DNA of 64,000 nt from Phyllobates terribilis (taxonomy: Eukaryota), in contig NW_027362769.1 of assembly GCF_046119375.1 (NCBI RefSeq), positions 186,496,001 to 186,560,000 of the forward strand, in the 5' to 3' direction. This document shows, one piece after another, positions 10,296 through 47,130 of the stretch. The number at the start of each line of letters is the position of its first letter. Within the stretch, counting starts at the first letter, position 1. Below the pieces are notes generated by a model. It was not told the DNA's origin and searched no databases. It saw only the letters and a list, made by a program, of their open reading frames with translations. A program made the position numbers and the translations under genes.

Positions 10296-11399
10296 CAGGG
10301 GTCTCGAACACGTGGCCCTTCAGGCTGCTTCATGCGGCCCGCAGGCACCATAGACCCCGATCGCGGCCCGGTCCATGAGCTGCCGGCAGCTGCGCTTCAG
10401 TTCAGTGTATTGCTGTGCAGAGACCGGCTCTCCGCACAGCAATACCAGTGTCAGCCACCGGCCTATCAGAGGTCAGCAGCTGATCTCTGCGTCCCAGCGC
10501 ATCGGCGCATGACGTCACTGACACGCGCAGATGTCAGTTGCTGACCTCTGATAGGCCGGCGGCTGACACTGGTATTGCTGTGCGGAGAGCCAGTCTCTGC
10601 ACGGCAATACACTGAACTGAAGAGCAGCTGCCGGCAGCTCCTGGACCGAGCTGCAATCGGGGTCTATGGTGCTTGCGGACCACAGGTACAGAAAGGACGC
10701 CGAGGGAACGGAGGACAGGTGAGAAGAATCTTTTTTTTTTCTCTTGTATGTGTAGAACGGCACAAGGGACAGTCCTCCAAGATGGGGACCAGGCTGGGGA
10801 CAGTCCTCCAATATGGTGACCAGGCTGGGGACAGTCGTAAAAAATGGGGACCAGGCTGGAGACCGTCCTAAAAGATGGGGACCAGGCTGGGGACAGTCCT
10901 AAAAGATGGGGACCAGGCTGGGGACAGTCCTAAAACATGGGGACCAGGCTGGGGACATTACAAGAGGGGGACCAGGCTGGGGACATATCTACAATATGGG
11001 GACCGGTATGTGACATTACGACAATATGGGGCCCAGTATGGAATATTATGACAAGATGGGGACAAAGATGGGGGACATTACAAGATGCAGACCAGGGTGG
11101 GGCACATTACTACAAGATTTTGGCAGAAAAACTTCAAAATAAAGCATGAAAAAATATTTTGCCACTAAAAATGCTGCTTTATATATAAACTAAAGTAAAC
11201 AAAAAAGTGCACGTTTTATTATCGCCACATCCATAACGACCCAAGCTATAAAAAATAAAATGGCAAAAATGTTCAAAAGGTGAATAGAAAAAAAAAATGG
11301 TATCACTAAAATGTCACTTTGTCCTGCAAAGAATGCGGCCCCCAAATTAAATTTTTTTCCATGTGTGGCCCATATACCCAGCCGAGTTTGAGACCCCTG
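10296..11399. mobile_element. Non-autonomous hAT (Buster/Charlie type) element, copy 1
   Basis: TIR CAGGGGTCTC(G/A)AAC ... GTTTGAGACCCCTG; perfect 8-bp TSD TGCTAAAG (10288-10295, 11400-11407). Confidence 0.93.
10780..11100. repeat. 31-bp G-rich minisatellite inside hAT copy 1
   Basis: Unit about GATGGGGACCAGGCTGGGGACAGTCCTAAAA, degenerating toward the 3' side. Confidence 0.8.
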
Positions 11400-13426: not shown

Positions 13427-14440
13427 ATGAGACGGACTCTACAACCCACAGAAGTTGCTCAGGTAGTGCAGCTCATCCAGGATGGCACATCAATGCGAGC
13501 TGTGGCAAGAAGGTTTGCTGTGTCTGTAAGCGTAGTGTCCAGAGGCTGGAGGCGCTACCAGGAGACAGGCCAGTACACCAGGAGACATGGAGGGGGCCGC
13601 AGGAGGGCAACAACCCAGCAGCAGGACCGCTACCTCCGCCTTTGTGCAAGGAGGAACAGGAGGAGCACTGCCAGAGCCCTGCAAAATGACCTCCAGCAGG
13701 CCACAAATGTGCATGTGTCTGCACAAACGGTTAGAAACCGACTCCATGAGGGTGGTATGAGGGTCCGACGTCCACAGATAGGAGTTGTGCTCACAGCCCA
13801 ACACCGTGCAGGACGCTTGGCATTTGCCACAGAACACCAGGATTGGCAAAGTGGCCACTGGCGCCCTATGCTCTTCACAGATAAAAGCAGGTTCACACTG
13901 AGCACATGTGACAGACGTGACAGAGTCTGGAGACGCCGTGGAGAGCGATCTGCTGCCTGCAGCATGACCGGTTTGGCAGTGGGTCAGTAATGGTGTGGGG
14001 TGGCATTTCTTTGGAGGGCCACACAGCCCTCCATGTGCTCGCCAGAGGTAGCCTGACTGCCATTAGGTACCGAGATGAGATCCTCAGACCCCTTGTGAGA
14101 CCATATGCTGGTGCGGTTGGCCCTGGGTTCCTCCTAATGCAGGACAATGCCAGACCTCATGTGGCTGGAGTGTGTCAGCAGTTCCTGCAAGATGAAGGCA
14201 TTGAAGCTATGGACTGGCCGCCCGTTCCCCAGACCTGAATCCGATTGAGCACATCTGGGACATCATGTCTCGCTCCATCCACCAACGTCACGTTGCACCA
14301 CAGACTGTCCAGGAGTTGGCGGATGCTTTAGTCCAGGTCTGGGAGGAGATCCCACAGGAGACCATCCGCAACCTCATCAGGAGCATGCCCAGGCATTGTA
14401 GGGAGGTCATACAGGCACGTGGAGGCCACACACAATACTC
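13427..14440 (+). pseudogene. Tc1 transposase, frameshifted
   Basis: [20 protein letters not shown]...LFTDKSRF; VWGGISLEG...LMQDNARPH; LIRSMPRHCREVIQARGGHTQY, spread over three frames. Confidence 0.9.
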
Positions 14441-15158
14441 AGCCTCATCAGGAGCATGCCCAGGCGTTGTAGGGAGGTCATACAGGCACGTGGAGGCCAC
14501 ACACAATACTCAGCCTCATCAGGAGCATGCCCAGGCGTTGTAGGGAGGTCATACAGGCACGTGGAGGCCACACACAATACTCAGCCTCATCAGGAGCATG
14601 CCCAGGCATTGTAGGGGGGTCATACAGGCACGTGGAGGCCACACACAATACTCAGCCTCATCAGTAGCATGCCCAGGCGTTGTAGGGGGGTCATACAGGC
14701 ACGTGGAGGCCACACACAATACTCAGCCTCATCAGGAGCATGCCCAGGCGTTGTAGGGAGGTCATACAGGCACGTGGAGGCCACACACAATACTCAGCCT
14801 CATCAGGAGCATGCCCAGGCGTTGTAGGGAGGTCATACAGGCACGTGGAGGCCACACACAATACTCAGCCTCATCAGGAGCATGCCCAGGCGTTGTAGGG
14901 AGGTCATACAGGCACGTGGAGGCCACACACAATACTCAGCCTCATCAGGAGCATGCCCAGGCGTTGTAGGGAGGTCATACAGGCACGTGGAGGCCACACA
15001 CAATACTCAGCCTCATCAGGAGCATGCCCAGGCGTTGTAGGGAGGTCATACAGGCACGTGGAGGCCACACACAATACTCAGCCTCATCAGGAGCATGCCC
15101 AGGCGTTGTAGGGAGGTCATACAGGCACGTGGAGGCAACACACAATACTCACCCTCAT
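14372..15158. repeat. 71-bp tandem array, 11 copies, same unit as 1-1997
   Basis: CCTCAT anchors at 14372 and 15153 are 781 bp apart (11 x 71). Confidence 0.97.
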
Positions 15159-19074: not shown

Positions 19075-22000
19075 TGGGCACAATGTATTGGGCACTACAA
19101 TGTACAGGCAATGCAATGTATTGGGCACTACAATATATTGGGCACTACAATGTTCAGGCACTACAATGTATTGGGCACTGCAATGTATTGGGCACTACAA
19201 TGTATTGGGCACTACAATGTATTGGGCACTACAATGTATTGGGCACTACAATGTATTGGGCACTACAATGTACAGGCACAGCAATGTATTGGGCACTACA
19301 ATGTATTGGGCACTGCAATGTACAGGCACTGCAATGTATTGGGTACTGCAATGTATTGGGCACTACAAGGTACGGGCACTACAACGTATTGGGCACTACA
19401 ATGTACAGGCACTACAATGTATTGGGTACTATAAGGTACAGATACTGCAATGTACGGGCTATACAATATATTGGGCACTACAACGTACGGGCACTACAAT
19501 GTATTGGGCACTACAATGTATTGGGCACTACAATGTGTTGGACACTACAATGTATTGGGCACTACAATGTATTGGGCACTACAATGTACAGGTATTGCAC
19601 TGTATTGGGCACTGCAATGTATTGGGTACTGCAATGTATTGGGCACTACAAGGTACGGGCAATACAAGGTACGGCAATACAATGTATTGGGCACTACAAC
19701 GTATTGGGCACTACAATGTACAGGCACTACAATGTATTGGGTACTGCAATGTATTGGGCACTATAAGGTACAGACACTGCAATGTACGTGCTATACAATA
19801 TATTGGGCACTACAACGTACGGGCAATACAATGTATTGGGCACTACAATGTACAGGCACTACAATGTACAGGCACTACAATGTATTGGGTACTGCAATGT
19901 ATTGGGCACTATAAGGTACAGACACTGCAATGTACGGGCTATACAATATATTGGGCACTACAACGTACGGGTAATACAATGTATTGGGCACTACAATGTA
20001 CAGGCACTGCAATGTATTGGGCACTAGAATGTACAGGCACTACAATGTATGGGCACTAGAATGTATGGGCAGTACAATGTACGGGCACTGCAATGTATTG
20101 GGTTCTGCAATGTACAGGTACTACAATGTATGGGCACTGCAATGTATGGGCACTACAATGTATGGGGTACTGCAAGGTACGGGCTCTGCAATGTATTGGG
20201 CACTACAATGTACGGGCAATACAATGTCTTGGGCACTACAATGGACAGGCATTGCAATGTGTTGGGCACTACAATGTACAGGCACGACAATGTATTGGGC
20301 ACTAGAATGTACAGGCACTAGAATGTACAGGCACTAGAACGTACAGGCACTAGAACGTACAGGTACTACAATGTATGGGCACTGCAATGTATGGGCACTA
20401 CAATGTATTGGGCACTACAAGGTACGGGCCCTGCAATGAACGGGCACTACAATGTATTGGGCACTACAATGTATTGGGCACTACAATGTAAGGGCAATAC
20501 AATGTAGAGGTACTGCAATTTATTGGGTACTACAATGTACAGGCACTGCAATGTGTTGGGCACTGCAATGTGTTGGGCACTACAATGTACAGGCATGACA
20601 ATGTATTGGGCACTAGAATGTACGGGCACTACAATGTACGGGTACTACAATGTATTGGGCACTAGAATGTATTGGGCACTACAATCTACAGGTACTGCAC
20701 TGTATTGGGCACTGCAATGTATTGGGTACTACAATGTACAGGCACTACAATGTATTGAGTACTGCAATGTATTGGGCACTATAAGGTACAGACACTGCAA
20801 TGTACGGGCTATACAATATATTGGGCACTACAACGTACAGGCAATGCAATGTATTGGGCACTACAATGTATTGGGCACTATAATGTACGGGCAATACAAT
20901 GTACCAGCACTACAATGTATTGGGCACTACAATGTATTGGGCACTACAATGTACGGGCAATACAATGTACAGGTACTGCAATTTATTGGGTACTACAATG
21001 TACAGGCACTGCAATGTGTTGGGCACTGCAATGTGTTGGGCACTACAATGTACAGGCATGACAATGTATTGGGCACTAGAATGTATGGGCACTAGAATGT
21101 ATGGGCACTACAATGTATTGGGTACTGCAATGTATTGGGCACTACAAGGTACGGGCTCTGCAATGAACGGGCAATACAATGTATTGGGCACTACAATGTA
21201 CGGGCAATACAATGTATTGGGCACTACAATGGACAGGCACTGCATTGCGTTTGGCACTACAATGTACAGGCACTACAATGTATTGGGCACTACAATGTAC
21301 AGGCACTGCAATGTATTGGGCACTAGAATGTACAGGCACTACAATGTATGGGCACTAGAATGTACGGGCAGTACAATGTACGGGCACTGCAATGTATTGG
21401 GTTCTGCAATGTACAGGTACTACAATGTATGGGCACTGCAATGTATTGGGCACTACAATGTATTGGGTACTACAATGTATTGGGCACTACAATGTATTGG
21501 GTACTGCAATGTATTGGGCACTACAAGGTACGGGCTCAGCAATGAACGGGCAATACAATGTATTGGACACTACAATGTACGGGCAATACAATGTATTGGG
21601 CACTACAATGGACAGGCATTGCAATGTGTTGGGCACTAGAATGTACAGGCACTAGAATGTACGGGCAATACAATGTACAGGTACTGCAATTTATTGAGTA
21701 CTACAATGTGTTGGGCACTACAATGTACAGGCATGACAATGTATTGGGCACTAGAATGTATGGGCACTAGAATGTATGGGCACTAGAATGTATGGGCACT
21801 ACAAGGTACGGGCCCTGCAATGAACGGGCACTACAATGTATTGGGCACTACAATGTATTGGGAACTACAATGTACGGGCAATACAATGTAGAGGTACTGC
21901 AATTTATTGGGTACTACAATGTACAGGCATGACAATGTGTTGGGCACTAGAATGTACAGGCATGACAATGTATTGGGCACTAGAATGTACAGGCATGACA

Positions 22001-23233
22001 ATGTATTGGGCACTAGAATGTACGGGCACTACAATGTACGGGTACTACAGTGTATTGGGCACTAGAATGTACAGGCACTACAATGTATGGGCACTAGAAT
22101 GTATTGGGCACTACAATGTACAGGCACTGCAATGTGTTGGGCACTAGAATGTACAGGCATGACAATGTATTGGGCACTAGAATGTACGGGCACTAGAATG
22201 TACGGGTACTACAATGTATTGGGCACTAGAATGTACAGGCACTACAATGTATGGGCACTAGAATGTATTGGGCACTGCAATGTTTGGGCACTAGAATGTA
22301 TTGGGCACTGCAATGTACAGGCAGTACAATGTACGGGCACTGCAATGTACAGGCAGTACAATGTATGGGCACTGCAATGTATTGGGTTCTGCAATGTACA
22401 GGTACTGCAATGTATGGGCACTACAATGTATTGGGCACTGCAATGTATTGGGCACTACAAGGTACGGGCTCAGCAATGAACGGGCAATACAATGTATTGG
22501 GCACTACAATGTACGGGCAATACAATGTATTGGGCACTACAATGGACAGGCACTGCAATGTGTTGGGCACTGCAATGTACAGGCACTACAATGTACAGGC
22601 ACGACAATGTATTGGGCACTAGAATGTACAGGCACTAGAATGTATTGGGCACTACAATGTATTGGGCACTACAATGTACAGGTACTGCAATTTACTGGGT
22701 ACTACAATGTGTTGGGCACTACAATGTACAGGCATGACAATGTATTGGGCACTAGAATGTACAGGCACTAGAATGTACGGGCACTAGAATGTAAGGGCAC
22801 TACAATGTATGGGCACTGCAATGTATTGGGCACTGCAAGGTACAGGCCCTGCAATGTACGGGCAATACAATGTACAGGCACTACAATGTGCAGGCACGAC
22901 AATGTATTGGGCACTAGAATGTACAGGCACTAAAATGTATTTGGCACTGAAATGTACGGGAACTACAATGTATTGGGCACTAGAATGTAAGGGCAATACA
23001 GTGTATTGGGCACTACAATGTACGGGCACTGAAATTTATTGGGTACTACAATGTACAGGCACTGCAATGTGTTGGGCACGACAATGTATTGGGCACTAGA
23101 ATGTACAGGCACTACAATGTACGGGTACTACAATGTATTGGGCACTACAAGGTACGGGCCCTGCAATGTATGGGCACTAGAATGTATTGGGCACTAAAAT
23201 GTATTGGGCACTAAAATGTATTGGGCACTACAA
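19075..23233. repeat. About 4.2-kb minisatellite of 15-17 bp monomers with higher-order structure
   Basis: Monomers GGGCACTACAATGTATT / AGGCACTACAATGTAC and variants; recurring multi-monomer blocks. Confidence 0.96.
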
Positions 23234-23644
23234 TGGCACATTTGGAAGTTTTTTGCAACATCCAATTCATGTTTATATCTGGAAACCACCAGTGAGGCCA
23301 AAATAGTCACTGTGCCTGCAGATTAATTCCTAGAGGGATAGAATTTCCAAAACGGACTAGCTTTCGTGAGTTTTCCACTGTTCCCGCACAGCAAAAGGTG
23401 TAACTTTGCAAAAAAAGGTATCATTTAGGGGAACATACAAGGTTTTGATCACATTTTGGGAGAGAGGATCAGTGACTAAACAATTATGTTTTCTCCCCAG
23501 TCTTCCATGACATTTACCGTATGGGTTAAGTAGCTTAAGGTTTTTATAGATCAGGTTTAATGGATCCAGAGATACCAATATCTGTATTTAGTAGCTTCTA
23601 AATTCTTTGTTTTTACCAAAGGAAAAGCTCAGCTTGAACCTATG

Positions 23645-37925: not shown

Positions 37926-38029
37926 CTAGAAGACGAAGGAAAGGGTTAATTAAATGACCGTAGAGAAGAGCCAATTACGCACATCGATCGATCTGACGCA
38001 GATCCAGCCAGGGATCAAAGGAGACACTA

Positions 38030-39215
38030 ACAGGGGCCCGACGGAGGAGGAGACGCTAACAGGGGCCCGACGGAGGAGGAGACGCTAACAGGGGCCCGAC
38101 GGAGGAGGAGACGCTAACAGGGGCCCGACGGAGGAGGAGGCGCTAACAGGGGCCCGACGGAGGAGGAGGCGCTAACAGGGGCCCGACGGAGGAGGAGGCG
38201 CTAACAGGGGCCTGACTGAGGAGGAGGCGCTAACAGGGGCCCGACTGAGGAGGAGGCGCTAACAGGGGCCCGACGGAGGAGGAGGCGCCAAGAGGGGACC
38301 CGACGGAGGAGGAGACGCCAAGAGGGGACCCGACGGAGGAGGAGACGCCAAGAGGGGACCCGACGGAGGAGGAGACGCCAAGAGGGGACCCGACGGAGGA
38401 GGCGACGCCAAGAGGGGACCCGACGGAGGAGGCGACGCCAAGAGGGGACCCGACGGAGGAGGAGACGCCAAGAGGGGACCCGACGGAGGAGGAGACGCCA
38501 AGAGGGGACCCGACGGAGGAGGAGACGCCAAGAGGGGACCCGACGGAGGAGGAGACGCCAAGAGGGGACCCGACGGAGGAGGAGACGCCAACAGGGGGCC
38601 CGACGGAGGAGGAGACGCCAAGAGGGGACCCGACGGAGGAGGAGACGCCAAGAGGGGACCCGACGGAGGAGGAGACGCCAACAGGGGCCCGACGGAGGAG
38701 GAGACGCCAACAGGGGGCCCGACGGAGGAGGAGACGCCAACAGGGGGCCCGACGGAGGAGGAGACGCCAACAGGGGGCCCGACGGAGGAGGAGACGCCAA
38801 CAGGGGGCCCGACGGAGGAGGAGACGCCAACAGGGGGCCCGACGGAGGAGGAGACGCCAACAGGGGGCCCGACGGAGGAGGAGACGCCAACAGGGGGCCC
38901 GACGGAGGAGGAGACGCCAACAGGGGGCCCGACGGAGGAGGAGACGCCAACAGGGGGCCCGACGGAGGAGGAGACGCCAACAGGGGGCCCGACGGAGGAG
39001 GAGACGCCAACAGGGGGCCCGACGGAGGAGGAGACGCCAACAGGGGGCCCGACGGAGGAGGAGACGCCAACAGGGGGCCCGACGGAGGAGGAGACGCCAA
39101 CAGGGGGCCCGACGGAGGAGGAGACGCCAACAGGGGGCCCGACGGAGGAGGAGACGCCAACAGGGGCCCGACGGAGGAGGAGACGCCAACAGGGGCCCGA
39201 CTGAGGAGGAGCCGA
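38030..39215. repeat. 29-30 bp tandem array, about 40 copies
   Basis: Unit GACGGAGGAGGAGACGCCAACAGGGGGCCC, in three variant blocks. Confidence 0.96.
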
Positions 39216-39298: not shown

Positions 39299-39458
39299 CT
39301 CAGGACATCGGCCAGAGCAGCGGCCGTCATCCAGCCACCATGGACCCGGCTGTAATCCTGCTTCAGAACCAGAACACAATATTGGACCAGGCCGTAACTA
39401 TAGGAATCCTCCTTCAGTTTCTGCAGCTCTTCACGTCCAGACGCCGCACTCAGTATAT
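39299..39458 (-). CDS. IQCB1: IQCB1 coding exon 2 (160 nt)
   Basis: AG/GT bounded; ILSAASGREELQKLKEDSYSYGLVQYCVLVLKQDYSRVHGGWMTAAALADVL (human QYCLLVLSQDYSRIQGGW). Confidence 0.96.
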
Positions 39459-39499
39459 CTCGAGACAGAGACAAAGAAGTGGATATCAGAGAAGGAGTT

Positions 39500-40617
39500 A
39501 GTAATGGCGGGTCCTGGCGTCCTTGGCCCAGTCAGTAATGGCGAGTCCTGGCGCCCGCAGCCCAGTCAGTAATGGCGGGTCCTGGCGCCCGCGGCCCAGT
39601 CAGTAATGGCGGGTCCTGGCGTTCGCGGACCAGTCAGTAAAGGCAGGTCCTGGCGCTCGCGGACCAGTCAGGTATGGCGGGTCCTGGCGCTCGCGGCCTA
39701 GTCAGGTATGGCGGGTTCTGGCGCTCGCGGCCCAGTCAGGTATGGCGGGTCCTGGCGCTCGCGGCCCAGTCAGGTATGGCGGGTCCTGGCGCTCGTGGCC
39801 CAGTCAGCAATGGCGGGTCCTGGCGCTCGCGGCCCAGTCAGCAATGGCGGGTCCTGGCGCTCGCGGCCCAGTCAGCAATGGCGGGTCCTGGCGCTCGCGG
39901 CCCAGTCAGCAATGGCGGGTCCTGGCGCTCGCGGCCCAGTCAGCAATGGCGGGTCCTGGCGCTCGCGGCCCAGTCAGCAATGGCGGGTCCTGGCGCTCGC
40001 GGCCCAGTCAGCAAAGGCGGGTCCTGGCGCTCGCGGCCCAGTCAGCAATGGCGGGTCCTGGCGCTCGCGGCCCAGTCAGCAATGGCGGGTCCTGGCGCTC
40101 GCGGCCCAGTCAGCAATGGCGGGTCCTGGCGCTCGCGGCCCAGTCAGCAATGGCGGGTCCTGGCGCTCGCGGCCCAGTCAGCAATGGCGGGTCCTGGCGC
40201 TCGCGGCCCAGTCAGCAATGGCGGGTCCTGGCGCTCGCGGCCCAGTCAGCAATGGCGGGTCCTGGCGCTCACGGCCCAGTCAGCAATGGCGGGTCCTGGC
40301 GCTCGCGGCCCAGTCAGCAATGGCGGGTCCTGTTGCTCGCGGCCCAGTCAGGTATGGCGGGTCCTGGCGCTCGCGGCCCAGTCAGGTATGGCGGGTCCTG
40401 GCGCTCGCGGCCCAGTCAGGCATGGCAGGTCCTGGCGCCCGTGGCCAGTCAGTAATGGCGGGTCCTGGCACTCGCGGCCCAGTCAGTAATGGCAGGTCCT
40501 GGTGCCCGCAGTCTAGTCAGGTATGGCAGGTCCTGGCACCCGCGGCCCAGTCAGTAATGGTGGGTCCCGGATCTCGTGCCCAGTCAGTAATGGCGGGTCT
40601 TGGCGCTCGCGGCTCAC
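39500..40617. repeat. 34-bp GC-rich tandem array, about 33 copies
   Basis: Unit GGCGGGTCCTGGCGCTCGCGGCCCAGTCAGCAAT. Confidence 0.96.
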
Positions 40618-40720
40618 CTCTCAGGGTCAGCAGCAGGATCGGGTCTGAGCCGGTGCTGCTCTCAGTCAGCTTAGCCGCCAGCTCCAGGATCCGGGGGTCC
40701 ACAGCCTGCTCCGCGCTCAT
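40618..40720 (-). CDS. IQCB1: IQCB1 coding exon 1 (ATG at 40720; acceptor 3 nt upstream)
   Basis: tcttctctgacgcag|GAG ATG; MSAEQAVDPRILELAAKLTESSTGSDPILLLTLR (human DPRILSIAAEV); donor GTGAGC. Confidence 0.93.
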
Positions 40721-40897
40721 CTCCTGCGTCAGAGAAGACAGAACAGATTATAGCGGCACGTTCCATCCTAGCACGATGGCCATCGCAGACAACGAAGTGT
40801 TAGCAATGTTCTAAGAAACAGGTGCATCTCACTAAATTAGAATATCATCAAAAAGTTAATTTATTTCAGTTCTTCAATACAAAAAGTGAAACTCCTA

Positions 40898-41949
40898 TAT
40901 TATATAGAGTCATTACACACAGAGGGATCTATTATATAGTCATTACACACAGAGGGATCTATTAGATAGAGTCATTACACACAGAGTGATCTATTATATA
41001 GAGTCATTACACGCAGAGGAATCTATTATATAGAGTCATTACACGCAGAGGGATCTATTATATAGAGTCATTACACACAGAGTGATCTATTATATAGAGT
41101 CATTACACACAGAGGGATCTATTATATAGAGTCATTACACACAGAGGGATCTATTATATAGAGTCATTACACACAGAGGGGTCTATTATATAGAGTCATT
41201 ACACACAGAGGGATCTATTATATAGTCATTACACACAGAGGGATCTATTAGATAGAGTCATTACACACAGAGTGATCTATTATATAGAGTCATTACACGC
41301 AGAGGAATCTATTATATAGAGTCATTACACGCAGAGGGATCTATTATATAGAGTCATTACACGCAGAGGGATCTATTATATAGAGTCATTACACACAGAG
41401 GGATCTATTATATAGAGTCATTACACAGAGGGATCTATTATATAGAGTCATTACACACAGAGGGATCTATTATATAGAGTCATTACACACAGAGCGATCT
41501 ATTATATAGAGTCATTACACACAGAGCGATCTATTATATAGAGTAATTACACACAGAGCGATCTATTATATAGAGTCATTACACACAGAGGGATCTATTA
41601 TATAGAGTCATTACACACAGAGGGATCTATTATATAGAGTCATTACACACAGAGGGATCTATTATATAGAGTCATTACACACAGAGGGATCTATTATATA
41701 GAGTCATTACACACAGAGGGATCTATTATATAGAGTCATTACACACAGAGTGATCTATTATATAGAGTCATTACACACAGAGGGATCTATTATATAGAGT
41801 CATTACACGCAGAGGGATCTATTATATAGAGTCTTTACACGCAGAGGGATCTATTATATAGTCATTACACACAGAGGGATCTATTATATAGAGTCATTAC
41901 ACACAGAGGGATCTATTATATAGAGTCATTACACACAGAGGGATCTATT
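40898..41949. repeat. 32-bp array in the left inverted repeat, about 33 copies
   Basis: Unit TATTATATAGAGTCATTACACACAGAGGGATC. Confidence 0.96.
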
Positions 41950-42079
41950 TCACGTGGTTATTTCTGTTAATGTTAATGATTATGGCTTACAGCCAATGAA
42001 AACACAAAAGTCATTATCTCAGTAAATTAGAATACTTTATAACAGCAGCTTGTCGTCCTCCTGAAATGTCTGTTCAGTA

Positions 42080-42710
42080 AATGCCCTCAATACTTGGTCG
42101 GCTCCTTTTGCATCAATTACTGCATCAATGCGGCAATGTGGCATGGAGGGATCAGCCTGTGGCATGGAGGGATCAGCCTGTGGCATGGAGGGATCAGCCT
42201 GTGGATCAGCCTGTGGCATGGAGGGATCAGCCTGTGGCCCTGCTGAGGGGTTATGGAAGCCCAGGTGGCTTTGATAGCAGCCTTCAGCTCGTCTGCATTG
42301 TTGGGTCTGGTGTCCCTCATCTTCCTCTTGACAATACCCCATAGATTCTCTATAATAGATCCTCTATGGGGTTAAGGTCAGGCGAGTTTGCTGCCAATCA
42401 AGCACAGTGATACTGTTGTGTGTAAACCAGGTATTGGTACTTTTGGCCGTGTGGACAGGGGCCAAGTCCTGCTGGAGAATGACATTTCCATCTCCATAAA
42501 GCTTGTCGGCAGAGGGAAGCATGAAGGGCTGTAAAATGTCCTGGTAGACGGCGGCGCTGACTTTGGTCTTGATAAAACACAGTGGACCTCCACCAGCAGA
42601 TGACATGGCCCCCCAAACCATCACTGATTGTGGAGACTTCACACTAGACCCCCAGCTGCTTGGATTGTGGCCTCTCCACTCTTCCTCCAGACTCTGGGAC
42701 CTTGTGGAGT
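42080..42710 (-). pseudogene. C-terminal half of a Tc1 transposase, decayed
   Basis: PQSVMVWGAMSSAG...QQDLAPVHTAKST...MRDTRPNNADELKAAIKATWASIT; contains a small 21-bp tandem amplification at about 42138-42235. Confidence 0.85.
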
Positions 42711-42922
42711 GTGTCAGTGACTGCCTTCTGGACATCTGTCAAGTCAGCAGTCTTCCCCATGATTGTGGAGCCTACTGAAACAGACTAAGGGACCTTTTTA
42801 AACGCTTAGGAAGCCTTTTCAGGTGTTTTTTGTTAATTATTCTAATTTACTGAGATAATGACTTTTGTGTTTTCATTGGCTGTAAGCCATAATCATCAAC
42901 ATTAACAGAAATAAACACGTGA

Positions 42923-44702
42923 AATAGATCCCTCTGCGTGTAATAACTCTATATAATAGATCCCTCTGCGTGTAATGACTCTATATAATAGATCCCTCTG
43001 CGTGTAATGACTCTATATAATAGATCCCTCTGCGTGTAATGACTCTATATAATAGATCCCTCTGCGTGTAATGACTCTATATAATAGATCCCTCTGCGTG
43101 TAATGACTCTATATAATAGATCCCTCTGCGTGTAATGACTCTATATAATAGATCCCTCTGCGTGTAATGACTCTATATAATAGATCCCTCTGCGTGTAAT
43201 GACTCTATATAATAGATCCCTCTGCGTGTAATGACTCTATATAATAGATCTCTCTGCGTGTAATGACTCTATATAATAGATCCCTCTGCGTGTAATGACT
43301 CTATATAATAGATCCCTCTGCGTGTAATGACTCTATATAATAGATCCCTCTGCGTGTAATGACTCTATATAATAGATCCCTCTGCGTGTAATGACTCTAT
43401 ATAATAGATCCCTCTGCGTGTAATGACTCTATATAATAGATCTCTCTGCGTGTAATGACTCTATATAATAGATCCCTCTGCGTGTAATGACTCTATATAA
43501 TAGATCCCTCTGCGTGTAATGACTCTATATAATAGATCCCTCTGCGTGTAATGACTCTATATAATAGATCCCTCTGCGTGTAATGACTCTATATAATAGA
43601 TCCCTCTGCGTGTAATGACTCTATATAATAGATCCCTCTGCGTGTAATGACTCTATATAATAGATCCCTCTGCGTGTAATGACTCTATATAATAGATCCC
43701 TCTGCGTGTAATGACTCTATATAATAGATCCCTCTGAGTGTAATGACTATATAATAGATCACTCCGCGTGTAATGACTCTATATAATAGATCACTCTGCG
43801 TGTAATGACTCTATATAATAGATCGCTCTGTGTGTAATGACTCTATATAATAGATCGCTCTGTGTGTAATGACTCTATATAATAGATCCCTCTGTGTGTA
43901 ATGACTCTATATAATAGATCCCTCTGTGTGTAATGACTCTATATAATAGATCCCTCTGTGTGTAATGACTCTATATAACAGATCCCTCTGTGTGTAATGA
44001 CTCTATATAATAGATCCCTCTGTGTGTAATGACTCTATATAATAGATCCCTCTGTGTGTAATGACTCTATATAATAGATCCCTCTGTGTGTAATGACTCT
44101 ATATAATAGATCCCTGTGTGTAATGACTCTATATAATAGATCACTCTGTGTGTAATGAGTCTATATAATAGATCACTCTGTGTAATGAGTCTATATAATA
44201 GATCACTCTGTGTGTAATGACTCTATATAATAGATCCCTCTGTGTGTAATGACTCTATATAATAGATCCCTCTGTGTGTAATGACTCTATATAATAGATC
44301 CCTCTGTGTGTAATGACTATATAATAGATCACTCTGCGTGTAATGACTATATAATAGATCCCTCTGTGTGTAATGACTATATAATAGATCCCTCTGTGTG
44401 TAATGACTCTATATAATAGATCCCTCTGTGTGTAATGACTCTATATAATAGATCCCTCTGCGTGTAATGACTATATAATAGATCACTCTGCGTGTAATGA
44501 CTATATAATAGATCCCTCTGTGTGTAATGACTCTATATAATAGATCCCTCTGTGTGTAATGACTCTATATAATAGATCCCTCTGTGTGTAATGACTCTAT
44601 ATAATAGATCCCTCTGTGTGTAATGACTCTATATAATAGATCACTCTGTGTGTAATGATTCTATATAATAGATCCCTCTGTGTGTAATGACTCTATATAA
44701 TA
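42923..44702. repeat. 32-bp array in the right inverted repeat, about 56 copies, reverse complement of 40898-41949
   Basis: Unit AATAGATCCCTCTG(C/T)GTGTAATGACTCTATAT. Confidence 0.96.
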
Positions 44703-44753
44703 TAGGAGCTTCACTTTTTGTATTGAAGAACTGAAATAAATGACCGTTTAGAT

Positions 44754-46741
44754 CAGGGGTCTCAAACACGCGGCCCGCCCCTCCGACTGCTTCATGCGGC
44801 CCGCAGGCACATAGACCCCATAACGATCGCGGCTCTCTCCAGCAGCCGCCTCCATCAGTGCCGTAGTGCAGTGTATTGCTGCGCAGAGACTAGCTCTCTG
44901 CACAGCAATACCAGTGTCAGCCGCCAGCCTATCAGAGGCCAGCAGCTGACATCTGCGTCCCATCGCAGCGGCGTATGACATCACTGCCATGCGCAGAGGT
45001 CAGCTGCTGGCCTCTGATAGGCCGGCGGCTGACACTGGTATTGCTGTGCAGAGAGCCGGTCTCTGCGCAGCAATACACTGCACTACGGCACTGATGGAGG
45101 CGGCTGTTGGAGAGAGCCGCGATAGTTACGGGGTCTGTGCCTGCGGGCCACAGGTGCAGGAAGGACGCCGAGGGAACGGAGGACAGGTGAGAACAATCTT
45201 TTTTTTTTTTTCTGTCATGTCTATGTGAAATACCTGGGGAGGGAACCTGTGCACAGTATATGGGGGGGGAGGGAACCTGTGCACAGTATATGGGGGGGGG
45301 AGGGAACCTGTGCACAGTATATGGGAGGGGGGAGGGAACCTGTGCACAGTATATGGGGGGGGGGGGAGGGAACCTGTGCACAGTATATGGGGGGGGGAGG
45401 GAACCTGTGCACAGTATATGGGGGGGAGGGAACCTGTGCACAGTATATGGGGGGGGGGAACCTGTGCACAGTATATGGGGGGGGGAACCTGTGCACAGTA
45501 TATGGGGGGGGGAACCTGTGCACAGTATATGGGGGGGGGAGGGAACCTGTGCACAGTATATGGGGGGGGAGGGAACCTGTGCACAGTATATGGGGGGGGA
45601 ACCTGTGCACAGTATATGAGGGGGGGGGGGTGGAGGGAACCTGTGCACAGTATATGGGGGGGGAAGGGAACCTGTGCATAGTATATGGGGGGGACGACCT
45701 GTGCACAGTATATGGGGGGGGAGGGAACCTGTGCACAGTATATGGGGGGGGGGAGGGAACCTGTGCACAGTATATGGGGGGGGAGGGAACCTGTGCACAG
45801 TATATGGGGGGGGAGGGAACCTGTGCACAGTATATGGGGGGGGAGGGAACCTGTGCACAGTATATGGGGGGGGGAACCTGTGCACAGTATATGGGGGGGG
45901 GAACCTGTGCACAGTATATGGGGAGGAGGAGGATACCTGTGCACAGTATATGGGGGGTACCTGTGCGCAGTATATGGGGGGGTGACCTGTGCACAGTATA
46001 TGTTGGAGGGGGGGGTGACCTGTGCACAGTATATGGGGGGTATGACGTGTGCACAGTATATGGTGGGGTGACCTGTGCACAGTATATGGTGGGGTGACCT
46101 GTGCACAGTATATGGGGGGGGTGACCTGTGCACAGTATATGGGGGGGTGACCTGTATACAGTATATGGGAGGGTGACCTGTATACAGTATATGGGGGGGT
46201 GACCTGTGCACAGTATATGGGGGGGGTGACCTGTGTGCAGTATATGGGGGGGGGGTGACCTGTGTGCAGTATATGGGGGGGGTGGACCTGTATGGGGGAC
46301 GTGTCTGCAATATGGCGACCTGGATGGAGGACGTGTCTGCAATATGGCGACCTGGATGGGGGAAATGTCTGCAATATGGGGACCTGGATGGGGGACGTGT
46401 CTGCAATATGGGGACCTGGATGGGGGATGTGTCTGCAATATGGGGACCTGGATGGGGGATGTGTCTGCAATATGGGGACCTGGATGGGGGATGTGTCTGC
46501 AATATGGGGACCTGGATGGGGGATGTGTCTGCAATATGGGGACCTGGATTGGGGATGTGTCTGCAATATGGGGACCTGGATGGGGGACGTGTCCACAATA
46601 TGAGGACCTGTTCAAAAGGTGTATAGAAAAAAAAAATGGTATCACTAAAAATGTCACTTTGTCCTGCAAATAATGCGGCCCCCCAAATTAAATGCTTTTT
46701 CCGTGTGTGGCCCATATACCCAGCTGAGTTTGAGACCCCTG
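44754..46741. mobile_element. Non-autonomous hAT (Buster/Charlie type) element, copy 2
   Basis: CAGGGGTCTCAAAC ... GTTTGAGACCCCTG; perfect TSD GTTTAGAT (44746-44753, 46742-46749); shares sub-terminal sequence with 10296-11399. Confidence 0.94.
45235..46610. repeat. G-rich minisatellites inside hAT copy 2
   Basis: GGGAACCTGTGCACAGTATATG(G)n units to about 46290, then a 32-bp unit GGGGACCTGGATGGGGGATGTGTCTGCAATAT. Confidence 0.93.
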
Positions 46742-47081
46742 GTTTAGATATCCTTATGTAGTGAGAAGCTCCTGTACTTTGTGTGTCAGCTTCCCACCAT
46801 TCTGACGATCTCTGCTCGCGGTCTGCCCGATCCCTTGTTATCATCCCGCCGCCGCCTGTCCTGACATTTCTTACACTCCTCTGTGAACCTGCGCTGCGGA
46901 CTGATACATTGTATCAAAAGGAGGAATCAGAAGAATAAACTCCAGGGCAAAAAAAATGCCCACTGGTGATGGGGAGACTCTAAAGGGTTAAGGACCAAGC
47001 CAGGCAGGCTACCAGGGGTTAATGAAACCAGTAATGGCCGCCGCCGCCCCGTCCCCAGGTCCCGCCCCCGCCCGCACTCAC

Positions 47082-47130
47082 GGAGCAGTTGCTCTGTCCT
47101 CTCAGACCGACTGCCTAAGATGAATTTTAT
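47082..47130 (-). other. IQCB1: Putative non-coding first exon of IQCB1 (5' end uncertain)
   Basis: Consensus donor CCG|GTGAGT at 47081 on the minus strand; the ATG exon has an acceptor, so an upstream UTR exon is required. Confidence 0.5.

What the first reader, a model, noticed from the sequence alone, without database searches (positions are those of the whole stretch)
40819..46774. Foldback-like element: both inverted repeats of a Tc1 expanded into kilobase satellites inside IQCB1 intron 1
Seen: a 32-bp segment of the IR/DR terminal repeat is amplified about 33 times in the left arm (40898-41949) and about 56 times in reverse orientation in the right arm (42923-44702), around a deleted transposase. 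The variant patterns are not mirror images: the inner right arm is a long run of the GCGTGT variant, while the left arm is mostly ACACAC. This suggests separate expansions. With its nested hAT, the element fills about 94% of the inferred 6.4-kb intron. Inference: it resembles Drosophila Foldback elements with modular TIR arrays. It would give IQCB1 pre-mRNA a duplex of more than 1 kb (ADAR or Dicer substrate) and the DNA a cruciform-prone site.
Basis: partly seen in the sequence, partly recalled or inferred. Interest (0 to 1): 0.7.

Follow-up and report, generated by a model that had tools for sequence, protein, structure and literature searches.

The report
Dead Tc1 with minisatellite-swollen inverted arms
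A dead Tc1 transposon in the first intron of a frog-like gene has had the same 32-base piece of each inverted end blown up into kilobase tandem arrays, a real and neat structure but an ordinary product of this very array-prone genome and of a known kind.

Summary
An internally deleted IR/DR-type Tc1 (40819-46774) carries a 32-bp unit 33 times in the left arm (40898-41949) and 56 times, inverted, in the right arm (42923-44702). An 8-bp-TSD hAT-like MITE (44754-46741) is nested in the right end. A spliced RNA contig joins 40723 to 47082, so the element fills 93.7% of a real 6,358-bp intron. The IQCB1 name rests on memory only.

The unit is a native part of the spacer between the outer and inner transposase-binding repeats. 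It is single-copy in other copies of the family (read ends) and in a related Tc1 from another organism. Thousands of distinct short-read contigs made of tandem units occur in three samples of this species and in a second species. 36.7% of this window is minisatellite, and this scan noted similar Tc1-derived arrays elsewhere in this genome. This locus is therefore one case of a genome-wide process.

The arrays are not mirror images and each has large private blocks, but they share derived variants. "Separate expansion" is only partly right. The element is foldback-like in shape only. A roughly 1-kb intronic RNA duplex is predicted; editing, dicing and cruciform formation are untested.

The parts
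40819..40897 (+). Outer part of the left terminal inverted repeat of the Tc1 (starts CAGGTGCATCTCAC). The outer transposase-binding direct repeat lies at 40828-40844. The flanking dinucleotide is AA, where TA is expected.
   Evidence: 778, 530 and 684 contigs in three DNA runs diverge into unrelated AT-rich flanks exactly before 40819. DR motif found. Aligns to the IR of a related Tc1, L001.
40898..41949 (+). Left-arm minisatellite: 33 units of 32 bp (some 30 bp), mostly the ACACAC type. The block A-C-F-G-B recurs 9 units apart.
   Evidence: TRF; unit typing; pattern matches.
41950..42040 (+). Inner part of the left IR, with the inner direct repeat at 42018-42034.
   Evidence: It is 97-98% identical to the right inner IR.
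42041..42831 (-). Internally deleted Tc1 transposase remnant. Pieces: 42839-42700 (5'UTR and first ~20 codons, ATG at 42760), 42646-42213 (catalytic core part) and 42164-42083 (C-terminus). A 21-bp micro-array (42137-42237) sits inside the C-terminal coding part.
   Evidence: ORFs. Weak DDE_3 match, E 7e-4, below Pfam cut-off. 713 Tc1-like transposase fragments at E<=1e-10, best 5.8e-39. blastn blocks against L001 show at least 317 bp missing. TRF.
42832..42922 (-). Inner part of the right IR, with the inner direct repeat at 42838-42854.
42923..44702 (-). Right-arm minisatellite: 56 inverted units. The inner 25 units (42923-43726) are a near-pure ACACGC run, with only one variant seen twice 6 units apart and one end variant. 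The outer 31 units are mixed.
   Evidence: TRF; unit typing.
44703..44753 (-). Outer right IR, proximal piece, ending in the target site (GTTTAGAT, 44746-44753) of the nested element.
   Evidence: Alignment with the left outer IR: 1 mismatch in the inner 41 nt.
44754..46741 (.). Nested non-autonomous hAT-like MITE. It has 14-bp perfect TIRs (CAGGGGTCTCAAAC), an 8-bp TSD, an internal 148-nt hairpin (44810-45139) and its own arrays (27 bp x36 at 45236-46281; 32 bp x10 at 46284-46610).
   Evidence: A second copy at 10296-11399 has the 8-bp TSD TGCTAAAG.
46750..46774 (-). Terminal 25 nt of the right outer IR, degenerate (5 mismatches in the first 28 nt against the left end). It follows the second TSD copy (46742-46749) and is followed by TA.
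40724..47081 (-). Host-gene intron (GT...AG on the minus strand, 6,358 bp) that holds the element. Exon 2 is 40618-40723 (ATG at 40720). Exon 1 ends at 47082. Exon 3 is 39299-39458.
   Evidence: A 1,051-nt contig of run X9 covers 40618-40723. It continues on one side with letters found at 47082-47111 and on the other with letters found at 39429-39458.

Best explanation
This is an old, immobile, internally deleted Tc1 of the IR/DR (Sleeping-Beauty-like) type sitting in intron 1 of a transcribed host gene.

A 32-bp stretch of the spacer between the outer and inner transposase-binding repeats is present once in ordinary family members and is bounded by a 4-bp TATT direct repeat. In both arms it has been turned into a minisatellite by the replication-slippage, unequal-exchange and break-repair processes that build 30-90-bp arrays all over this genome.

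The two arrays most likely began from a shared state. Either the source element already had a short array in both IRs, or units were copied from arm to arm by conversion. They then grew and turned over separately. The right arm's inner 25-unit block is the most recent growth.

The arrays are a passive by-product. Their only likely consequence is a long intramolecular duplex in the pre-mRNA intron.

Shown: the anatomy, the single-copy ancestral state, the many array loci, the non-mirror order, the intron and the predicted pairing. Inferred: the expansion mechanism, the shared start, the order of events and the lack of function.
For: 1. Native IR segment. With each array collapsed to one unit, both frog arms align collinearly with the roughly 200-bp IRs of a related Tc1 in another organism (L001), where the segment is single-copy.

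2. One unit in ordinary copies of this genome. Contigs in all four runs leave the stretch right after one unit plus TATT (places 40933 and 41091). They continue TCAAGTGTTTATTTCTGTTAATG..., which is the family version of the sequence that follows the array here at 41950.

3. A very abundant family. 22,069, 39,188 and 54,774 contigs were laid in three DNA runs, with hundreds of different flanks at 40818.

4. Arrays at many loci. 7,400, 19,809 and 32,605 contigs fit two places of the 9-unit stretch, so they are built of tandem units. One locus with about 24 unit types cannot yield so many. The counts include a second species, organism C.

5. An array-prone genome. 36.7% of the window lies in 17 arrays. 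Introns 2 and 3 of the same gene are largely arrays. Two copies of the hAT-like MITE in the window differ by more than 1 kb of internal array. The transposase remnant itself holds a 21-bp micro-array.

6. Arm-private growth. The B run has only 2-3 mutational events in about 800 bp, while the non-array IR parts of the two arms differ by about 2.4%. The left arm has the ACFGB duplication.

7. Shared derived states between the arms.

8. Immobility. The right end is split by the MITE and is degenerate, the transposase is deleted, and the left TA is lost.

9. Precedent. Variable-copy satellites inside a Xenopus Tc1/mariner MITE (miDNA4) are explained by AT-rich microhomologies (PMC12628747, PMC9659126). 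Foldback shapes can arise in any TE lineage by transposase loss and TIR elongation (Marzo 2008, as cited in PMC4079207).
Against: - No other full copy from this genome could be fetched. Whether array-bearing copies form an inherited subfamily or arise repeatedly is open.
- Contig counts are not copy numbers.
- The shared variants include slippage-prone and possibly hot sites, so p = 0.035 is only suggestive.
- Unit order shows no ancestral collinearity in the mirror sense.
- Array lengths rest on the assembly alone.
- The unit has no hairpin of its own (z about 0), and the flanking microhomology is only 4 bp, so the trigger for expansion is not identified.
Confidence: 0.75

Rival explanations
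1. A true mobile foldback-type subfamily. A Tc1 derivative with long modular arms transposes as such, the arrays help transposase recruitment, and this copy inherited both arrays from a master element.
For: Tandem units of this kind occur at many loci and in two species. Earlier notes of this scan list other Tc1 copies with arrays in both IRs (s1-218061, unchecked). Galileo and Tetris arrays are thought to add transposase-binding sites (PMC4079207).
Against: The DR binding motif occurs only 3 times, all outside the arrays, so the units add no known binding site. From general knowledge of Sleeping Beauty, kilobase spacing between the outer and inner DRs is expected to impair IR/DR transposition. 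The most homogeneous block is private to one arm and younger than the arm divergence. This copy is disabled.
Confidence: 0.1
2. Fully independent expansions in the two arms after insertion, with all shared variants due to recurrent mutation.
For: No mirror collinearity. Large private blocks. Several shared variants are dinucleotide slips that recur easily. The genome makes arrays everywhere.
Against: Both arms carry the same two transversions at unit position 27 and the same A>G at position 22, each in several units. Three shared states among 8 and 10 gives p about 0.035 under uniform placement.
Confidence: 0.1
3. Assembly artefact. The arrays are mis-sized, or the inverted arrangement is a false join in a repeat-rich region.
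For: No read or contig spans either array, and the read-laying tool cannot lay reads in them. Arrays of 1-2 kb are error-prone in assemblies.
Against: Both inner and both outer array boundaries join to the expected IR sequence in the right order and orientation. A short-read contig of the probable source sample crosses the left flank-element junction with 0 differences (record 1). The central remnant is collinear with one element. The variant structure is that of real arrays.
Confidence: 0.05

Closest known systems
miDNA4, a Tc1/mariner MITE of Xenopus tropicalis carrying a satellite (Scalvenzi & Pollet 2014, as described in PMC12628747 and PMC9659126)
   Same: A frog Tc1/mariner-derived non-autonomous element. 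The monomer occurs once or as arrays of variable length in different copies. AT-rich short direct repeats flank the monomer, and expansion is ascribed to replication or repair at microhomologies.
   Different: In miDNA4 the satellite lies inside the MITE body and was proposed to have been captured. Here the unit is a native piece of the IR/DR spacer, it is amplified in both inverted arms, and the flanking microhomology is only 4 bp.
Tetris and Galileo, foldback-like transposons of Drosophila with tandem repeats inside long TIRs (PMC4079207)
   Same: Long inverted arms made mostly of tandem sub-repeats derived from TIR sequence. Repeat number varies between arms and between copies. The transposase is lost. 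The same repeats also form arrays elsewhere in the genome.
   Different: Those elements belong to the Mutator-like or P superfamilies, with 7-10-bp TSDs and units of about 220 bp (Tetris), and Galileo units carry extra transposase-binding sites. Here the element is a Tc1 with a TA target and 32-bp units that lack the binding motif.
Drosophila melanogaster FB (foldback) elements
   Same: Overall architecture: kilobase inverted arms of short tandem repeats around a small middle domain.
   Different: There is no sequence, TSD or transposase relationship. FB arms reach the very termini, whereas here ordinary Tc1 outer IR sequence caps the arrays.
Tc1-like-derived satellite DNA in Rana esculenta (Pontecorvo et al. 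2000, cited in PMC4079207; not read here)
   Same: A frog Tc1-like element linked to tandem repeat DNA.

Membership tests
Tc1/mariner, IR/DR-type Tc1 (Sleeping-Beauty-like) | Roughly 200-bp terminal inverted repeats, each with an outer and an inner copy of a transposase-binding direct repeat | tested here: met
   CTCAsTAAATTAGAATA is found at 40828, 42018 (+) and 42838 (-). The fourth site, in the right outer end, is degenerate. The collapsed arms align with the IRs of a related Tc1.
Tc1/mariner, IR/DR-type Tc1 (Sleeping-Beauty-like) | TA target-site duplication next to CAG... termini | tested here: inconclusive
   The right flank is TA (46775-76) and the left flank is AA (40817-18). The family terminus at 40819 is fixed by hundreds of diverging contigs. 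The relative L001 has TA|CAGGTG.
Tc1/mariner, IR/DR-type Tc1 (Sleeping-Beauty-like) | Tc1-like DDE transposase between the IRs | tested here: met
   The remnant matches 713 Tc1-like transposase fragments at E<=1e-10 (best 5.8e-39, 70% identity). Pfam DDE_3 scores E 7e-4, below the cut-off. It is internally deleted.
Foldback (FB) elements in the strict sense | Long inverted arms built of tandem sub-repeats, with a small or absent middle domain | tested here: met
   With the nested MITE removed, the arms are 1,222 and 1,947 bp of 3,960 bp, and the arrays make up 71.5%.
Foldback (FB) elements in the strict sense | FB/Mutator-type termini, TSD of 8-10 bp and a matching transposase lineage | tested here: not met
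   The termini, the dinucleotide target and the transposase remnant are all Tc1.
Foldback-like TIR arrays that multiply transposase-binding sites (Galileo model) | The repeated unit contains the transposase recognition sequence | tested here: not met
   The DR motif is absent from all 89 units, even with 2 mismatches allowed.
TE-internal satellite of variable copy number (miDNA4-type) | The same monomer is present once in some copies and as arrays in others | tested here: met
   Read ends show single-unit copies, and thousands of contigs consist of tandem units. Counts per copy could not be made.
TE-internal satellite of variable copy number (miDNA4-type) | Short AT-rich direct repeats (5 bp or more) flank the monomer | tested here: inconclusive
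   Only TATT (4 bp) is repeated 32 bp apart in the collapsed IR.
IQCB1 (NPHP5) gene | Exons encode a protein orthologous to IQCB1 | tested here: inconclusive
   The exon 2 and exon 3 translations resemble my recollection of the human IQCB1 N-terminus. Pfam gave nothing, PDB gave nothing, and the Atlas was busy three times. The joined exons were not searched.

The most novel reading that the evidence does not exclude
A Tc1 lineage has independently evolved a foldback architecture whose two arrays are kept alike by arm-to-arm conversion. Because the element sits in a transcribed intron, the host gene produces a hairpin RNA of about 1 kb. That hairpin is edited or diced into small RNAs matching the IR spacer present in every copy of a very abundant Tc1 family. 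This would be a host-driven silencing trigger, like the TIR-derived dsRNA that silences Tc1 in C. elegans (general knowledge).
Probability: 0.08. Interest if true: 0.6.

Novelty: new member of a known kind. Interest (0 to 1): 0.3.

Why it matters
This is a clean, readable example of two things: a piece of a transposon end becoming a minisatellite, and a foldback shape arising in a Tc1, a lineage for which I found no described case in the papers read here. Together with the rest of the window, it shows how much intron growth in this large genome comes from arrays growing inside dead transposons rather than from new insertions alone. The one possibly consequential point is the predicted 1-kb intronic RNA duplex in an expressed gene. 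That can be tested with matched DNA, RNA and small-RNA data. No evidence here shows that the duplex does anything.

Tried and rejected
As the tool advised, only the left junction plus 9 units was laid. No run with raw long reads was offered, so array lengths stay unconfirmed.
- Mirror collinearity of unit order: local and global unit alignments score no better than shuffles. The non-mirror order scored higher (z 2.6-4.6). I discount this because shuffling destroys the run structure and because such an order has no simple physical meaning.
- Hairpin-driven slippage: three tandem units fold no better than shuffles on either strand.
- Fetching other copies. The best protein relatives are only 60-72% identical and mostly from fish, so this genome is not in that collection. 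One locus (L001) was useful as an outgroup. Another, P0001, had no DNA.
- The arrays hold no long ORF, so they cannot be traced through protein look-ups.
- A metagenome scan for the unit found nothing.
- A summed-depth ratio of unit to TIR as a measure of units per arm was rejected. It is unclear whether contigs that fit several places are laid once or several times.
- Gene naming failed by Pfam, PDB and the Atlas. I ran no further search on a side issue.
- The bacterial promoter/terminator scan is irrelevant here.
Full report
**What is there**

Tandem Repeats Finder reports a 32-bp array at 40898-41949 (33.1 copies, 95% matches) and another at 42923-44702 (56.1 copies, 97% matches). Their consensus units are reverse complements of each other. 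The unit matches 77 times in the window at up to 3 mismatches, against 0 expected. All matches lie in these two blocks, on the + strand in the left block and the - strand in the right. The arms pair without gaps for up to 661 nt at 93%.

**The element around the arrays**

The element starts at 40819 (CAGGTGCATCTCAC...) and ends at 46774 (...CTCCTG, followed by TA). The direct-repeat motif CTCAsTAAATTAGAATA occurs at 40828 (outer left), 42018 (inner left) and 42838 (inner right, minus strand), and nowhere else in the window. This is an IR/DR-type Tc1, and each array lies in the spacer between the outer and inner repeat.

Between the inner repeats, on the minus strand, lie pieces of a Tc1 transposase:
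- an MGKTADLTDVQK... start;
- a core piece with ...SVMVWGAMS...QQDLAPVHTAK...;
- a C-terminal piece.

The core piece matches 713 Tc1-like transposase fragments at E<=1e-10 (best 5.8e-39, 70% identity). It matches Pfam DDE_3 only weakly, below the cut-off. Against a related element (L001), the remnant aligns in three blocks and lacks at least 317 bp. A 21-bp micro-array sits inside its C-terminal part.

The right outer end is split by a 1,988-bp hAT-like MITE (44754-46741). This MITE has perfect 14-bp TIRs and an 8-bp duplication, GTTTAGAT, at 44746-53 and 46742-49. These coordinates correct my first indexing by 2 bp. The last 25-28 nt of the right Tc1 end are degenerate, and the left flank reads AA where TA is expected. 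The copy is dead.

**The intron**

A 1,051-nt contig of run X9 covers 40618-40723. It continues on one side with 30 letters that occur only at 47082-47111 and on the other with 30 letters that occur only at 39429-39458. X9 therefore holds spliced RNA. Exon 2 is 40618-40723 and the intron is 40724-47081 (6,358 bp, GT...AG on the minus strand). The element fills 93.7% of it. It is not known whether the X9 animal carries the insertion.

The exon 2 and exon 3 translations resemble my memory of the N-terminus of human IQCB1. No tool confirmed the name: Pfam and PDB gave nothing, and the Atlas was busy.

**Origin of the unit**

When each array is collapsed to one unit, both arms align collinearly with the two roughly 200-bp IRs of a related Tc1 from another organism (L001, NCBI assembly GCA_977066275.1). 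There the homologous stretch occurs once, followed by the same TATTTCAAGTGTTTATTTC. The unit is thus a native part of the IR spacer, not captured DNA.

In the laid reads, contigs from all four runs leave the stretch right after one unit plus TATT. They continue TCAAGTGTTTATTTCTGTTAATG..., the family version of what follows the array here. Ordinary copies in this genome therefore also have one unit.

**How common this is**

- The Tc1 end and unit attract 22,069, 39,188 and 54,774 contigs in three DNA runs. Two runs are samples of the window's species and one is another species.
- Hundreds of different AT-rich flanks begin exactly at 40818.
- 7,400, 19,809 and 32,605 of these contigs fit two places within the 9-unit stretch, which means they consist of tandem units. 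One locus with about 24 unit types cannot produce so many distinct contigs. Arrays of this unit therefore exist at many loci and in at least two species. Contig counts are not copy numbers, and I could not count units per copy.
- Independently, 36.7% of this window lies in 17 arrays of 16-86-bp period.
- Intron 2 of the same gene is 96% a 34-bp array.
- A second copy of the nested MITE family at 10296-11399 (TSD TGCTAAAG) carries about 0.35 kb of internal array, against 1.37 kb in the nested copy.
- Earlier notes of this scan, unchecked by me, list several Tc1-derived arrays in this genome. One is a Tc1 whose two IRs both carry the same minisatellite (s1-218061) and another is a 16.8-kb array inside a Tc1 IR/DR (s1-237611).

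**Separate or shared expansion**

The unit order is not mirrored, and a unit-level alignment is no better than shuffles. Each arm has private growth:
- On the right, the inner 25 units form an ACACGC run with only 2-3 mutational events in about 800 bp.
- On the left, the block A-C-F-G-B recurs 9 units apart.

The non-array IR parts of the two arms differ by about 2.4%, so the right inner run is clearly younger than the arms.

Yet both arms share derived states. ACACGC is derived because the outgroup and the first unit have ACACAC. Both arms also share GTG and GCG at unit position 27, and the same AG and AC dinucleotide losses. Three shared substitution states among 8 and 10 give p about 0.035 under uniform placement. 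This is suggestive, not strong, since hot sites exist. My reading is a shared start followed by separate turnover. The shared start would be either a short array already present in both IRs of the source element, or arm-to-arm conversion.

**Mechanism**

This part is inferred. A first duplication probably occurred between the TATT repeats 32 bp apart. Growth then followed by slippage, unequal sister exchange, or out-of-register synthesis-dependent repair, as proposed for miDNA4 in Xenopus (PMC12628747, PMC9659126) and known for minisatellites in general. The unit has no hairpin of its own.

**Consequences**

Folding the pre-mRNA-sense strand of 40819-44753 gives -2,435 kcal/mol. It has 1,038 base pairs between the two arrays, covering the whole left array, in 19 helices of up to 191 bp. 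A duplex of about 1 kb is therefore predicted. Editing and dicing were not testable, because only contigs were available and they mix all family copies.

In run X9, G replaces A at 40863 in 14% of summed depth, against 0.25-0.65% in the three DNA runs. This is family-wide, on the + strand, and may reflect which copies are expressed. I note it only.

A DNA cruciform is unlikely with a 973-bp spacer. This rests on general knowledge that inverted-repeat fragility falls steeply with spacer length.

**Comparison with known systems**

The shape is that of foldback elements: long arms of tandem sub-repeats around a small middle. The Tetris paper cites the suggestion that such shapes can evolve in any TE lineage through transposase loss and TIR elongation (PMC4079207). 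Membership in FB proper fails on termini, TSD and transposase. The Galileo model of units that add transposase-binding sites also fails, because the DR motif is absent from the units. The closest frog precedent is miDNA4. Tc1-linked satellites in Rana are also cited (PMC4079207). This is a new member of a known kind.

**Verdict**

It is a tidy but ordinary product of an array-prone genome. Interest is 0.3.

Noticed in passing
window 39459-40617 and 38019-39211: Intron 2 of the same gene (1,159 bp between exon 3 at 39299-39458 and exon 2) is 96% a 34-bp minisatellite (39496-40613). The next intron opens with a 1.2-kb 30-bp array. This gene's introns are largely built of arrays.
   Followed up: partly
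window 10296-11399: A second copy of the hAT-like MITE nested in the Tc1 (TIR CAGGGGTCTCAAAC, 8-bp TSD TGCTAAAG). It has the same internal hairpin region but only about 11 units of a 31-bp repeat, and it lacks the 27-bp x36 array of the nested copy. Array content differs by more than 1 kb between the two copies.
   Followed up: partly
window 42137-42237: A 21-bp (and 33-bp) micro-array lies inside the C-terminal coding part of the transposase remnant (PPCHRLI repeats in translation). It is a third small expansion within the same element.
   Followed up: no
window 1-64000: 36.7% of the window lies in 17 tandem arrays of 16-86-bp period. The same 71-bp array occurs at 1-1997 and 14372-15158, and a 4.2-kb 16-bp array lies at 19080-23235.
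   Followed up: no
window 40863 (family-wide, run X9): In the RNA-containing run X9, G replaces A at 40863 in 14% of summed contig depth, against 0.25-0.65% in three DNA runs. At 41020, G is 98% in X9 against 26-29% in the two DNA runs of this species. This could be A-to-I editing of Tc1 end transcripts or biased expression of some copies. Contigs cannot tell which.
   Followed up: no
L001 2482-3932 (NCBI GCA_977066275.1): A related, also defective Tc1 with the same IR/DR layout and TA|CAGGTG ends in another organism's assembly, next to a (TA)95 tract. The best protein relatives of the frog remnant are mostly from cyprinid and other fishes.
   Followed up: partly
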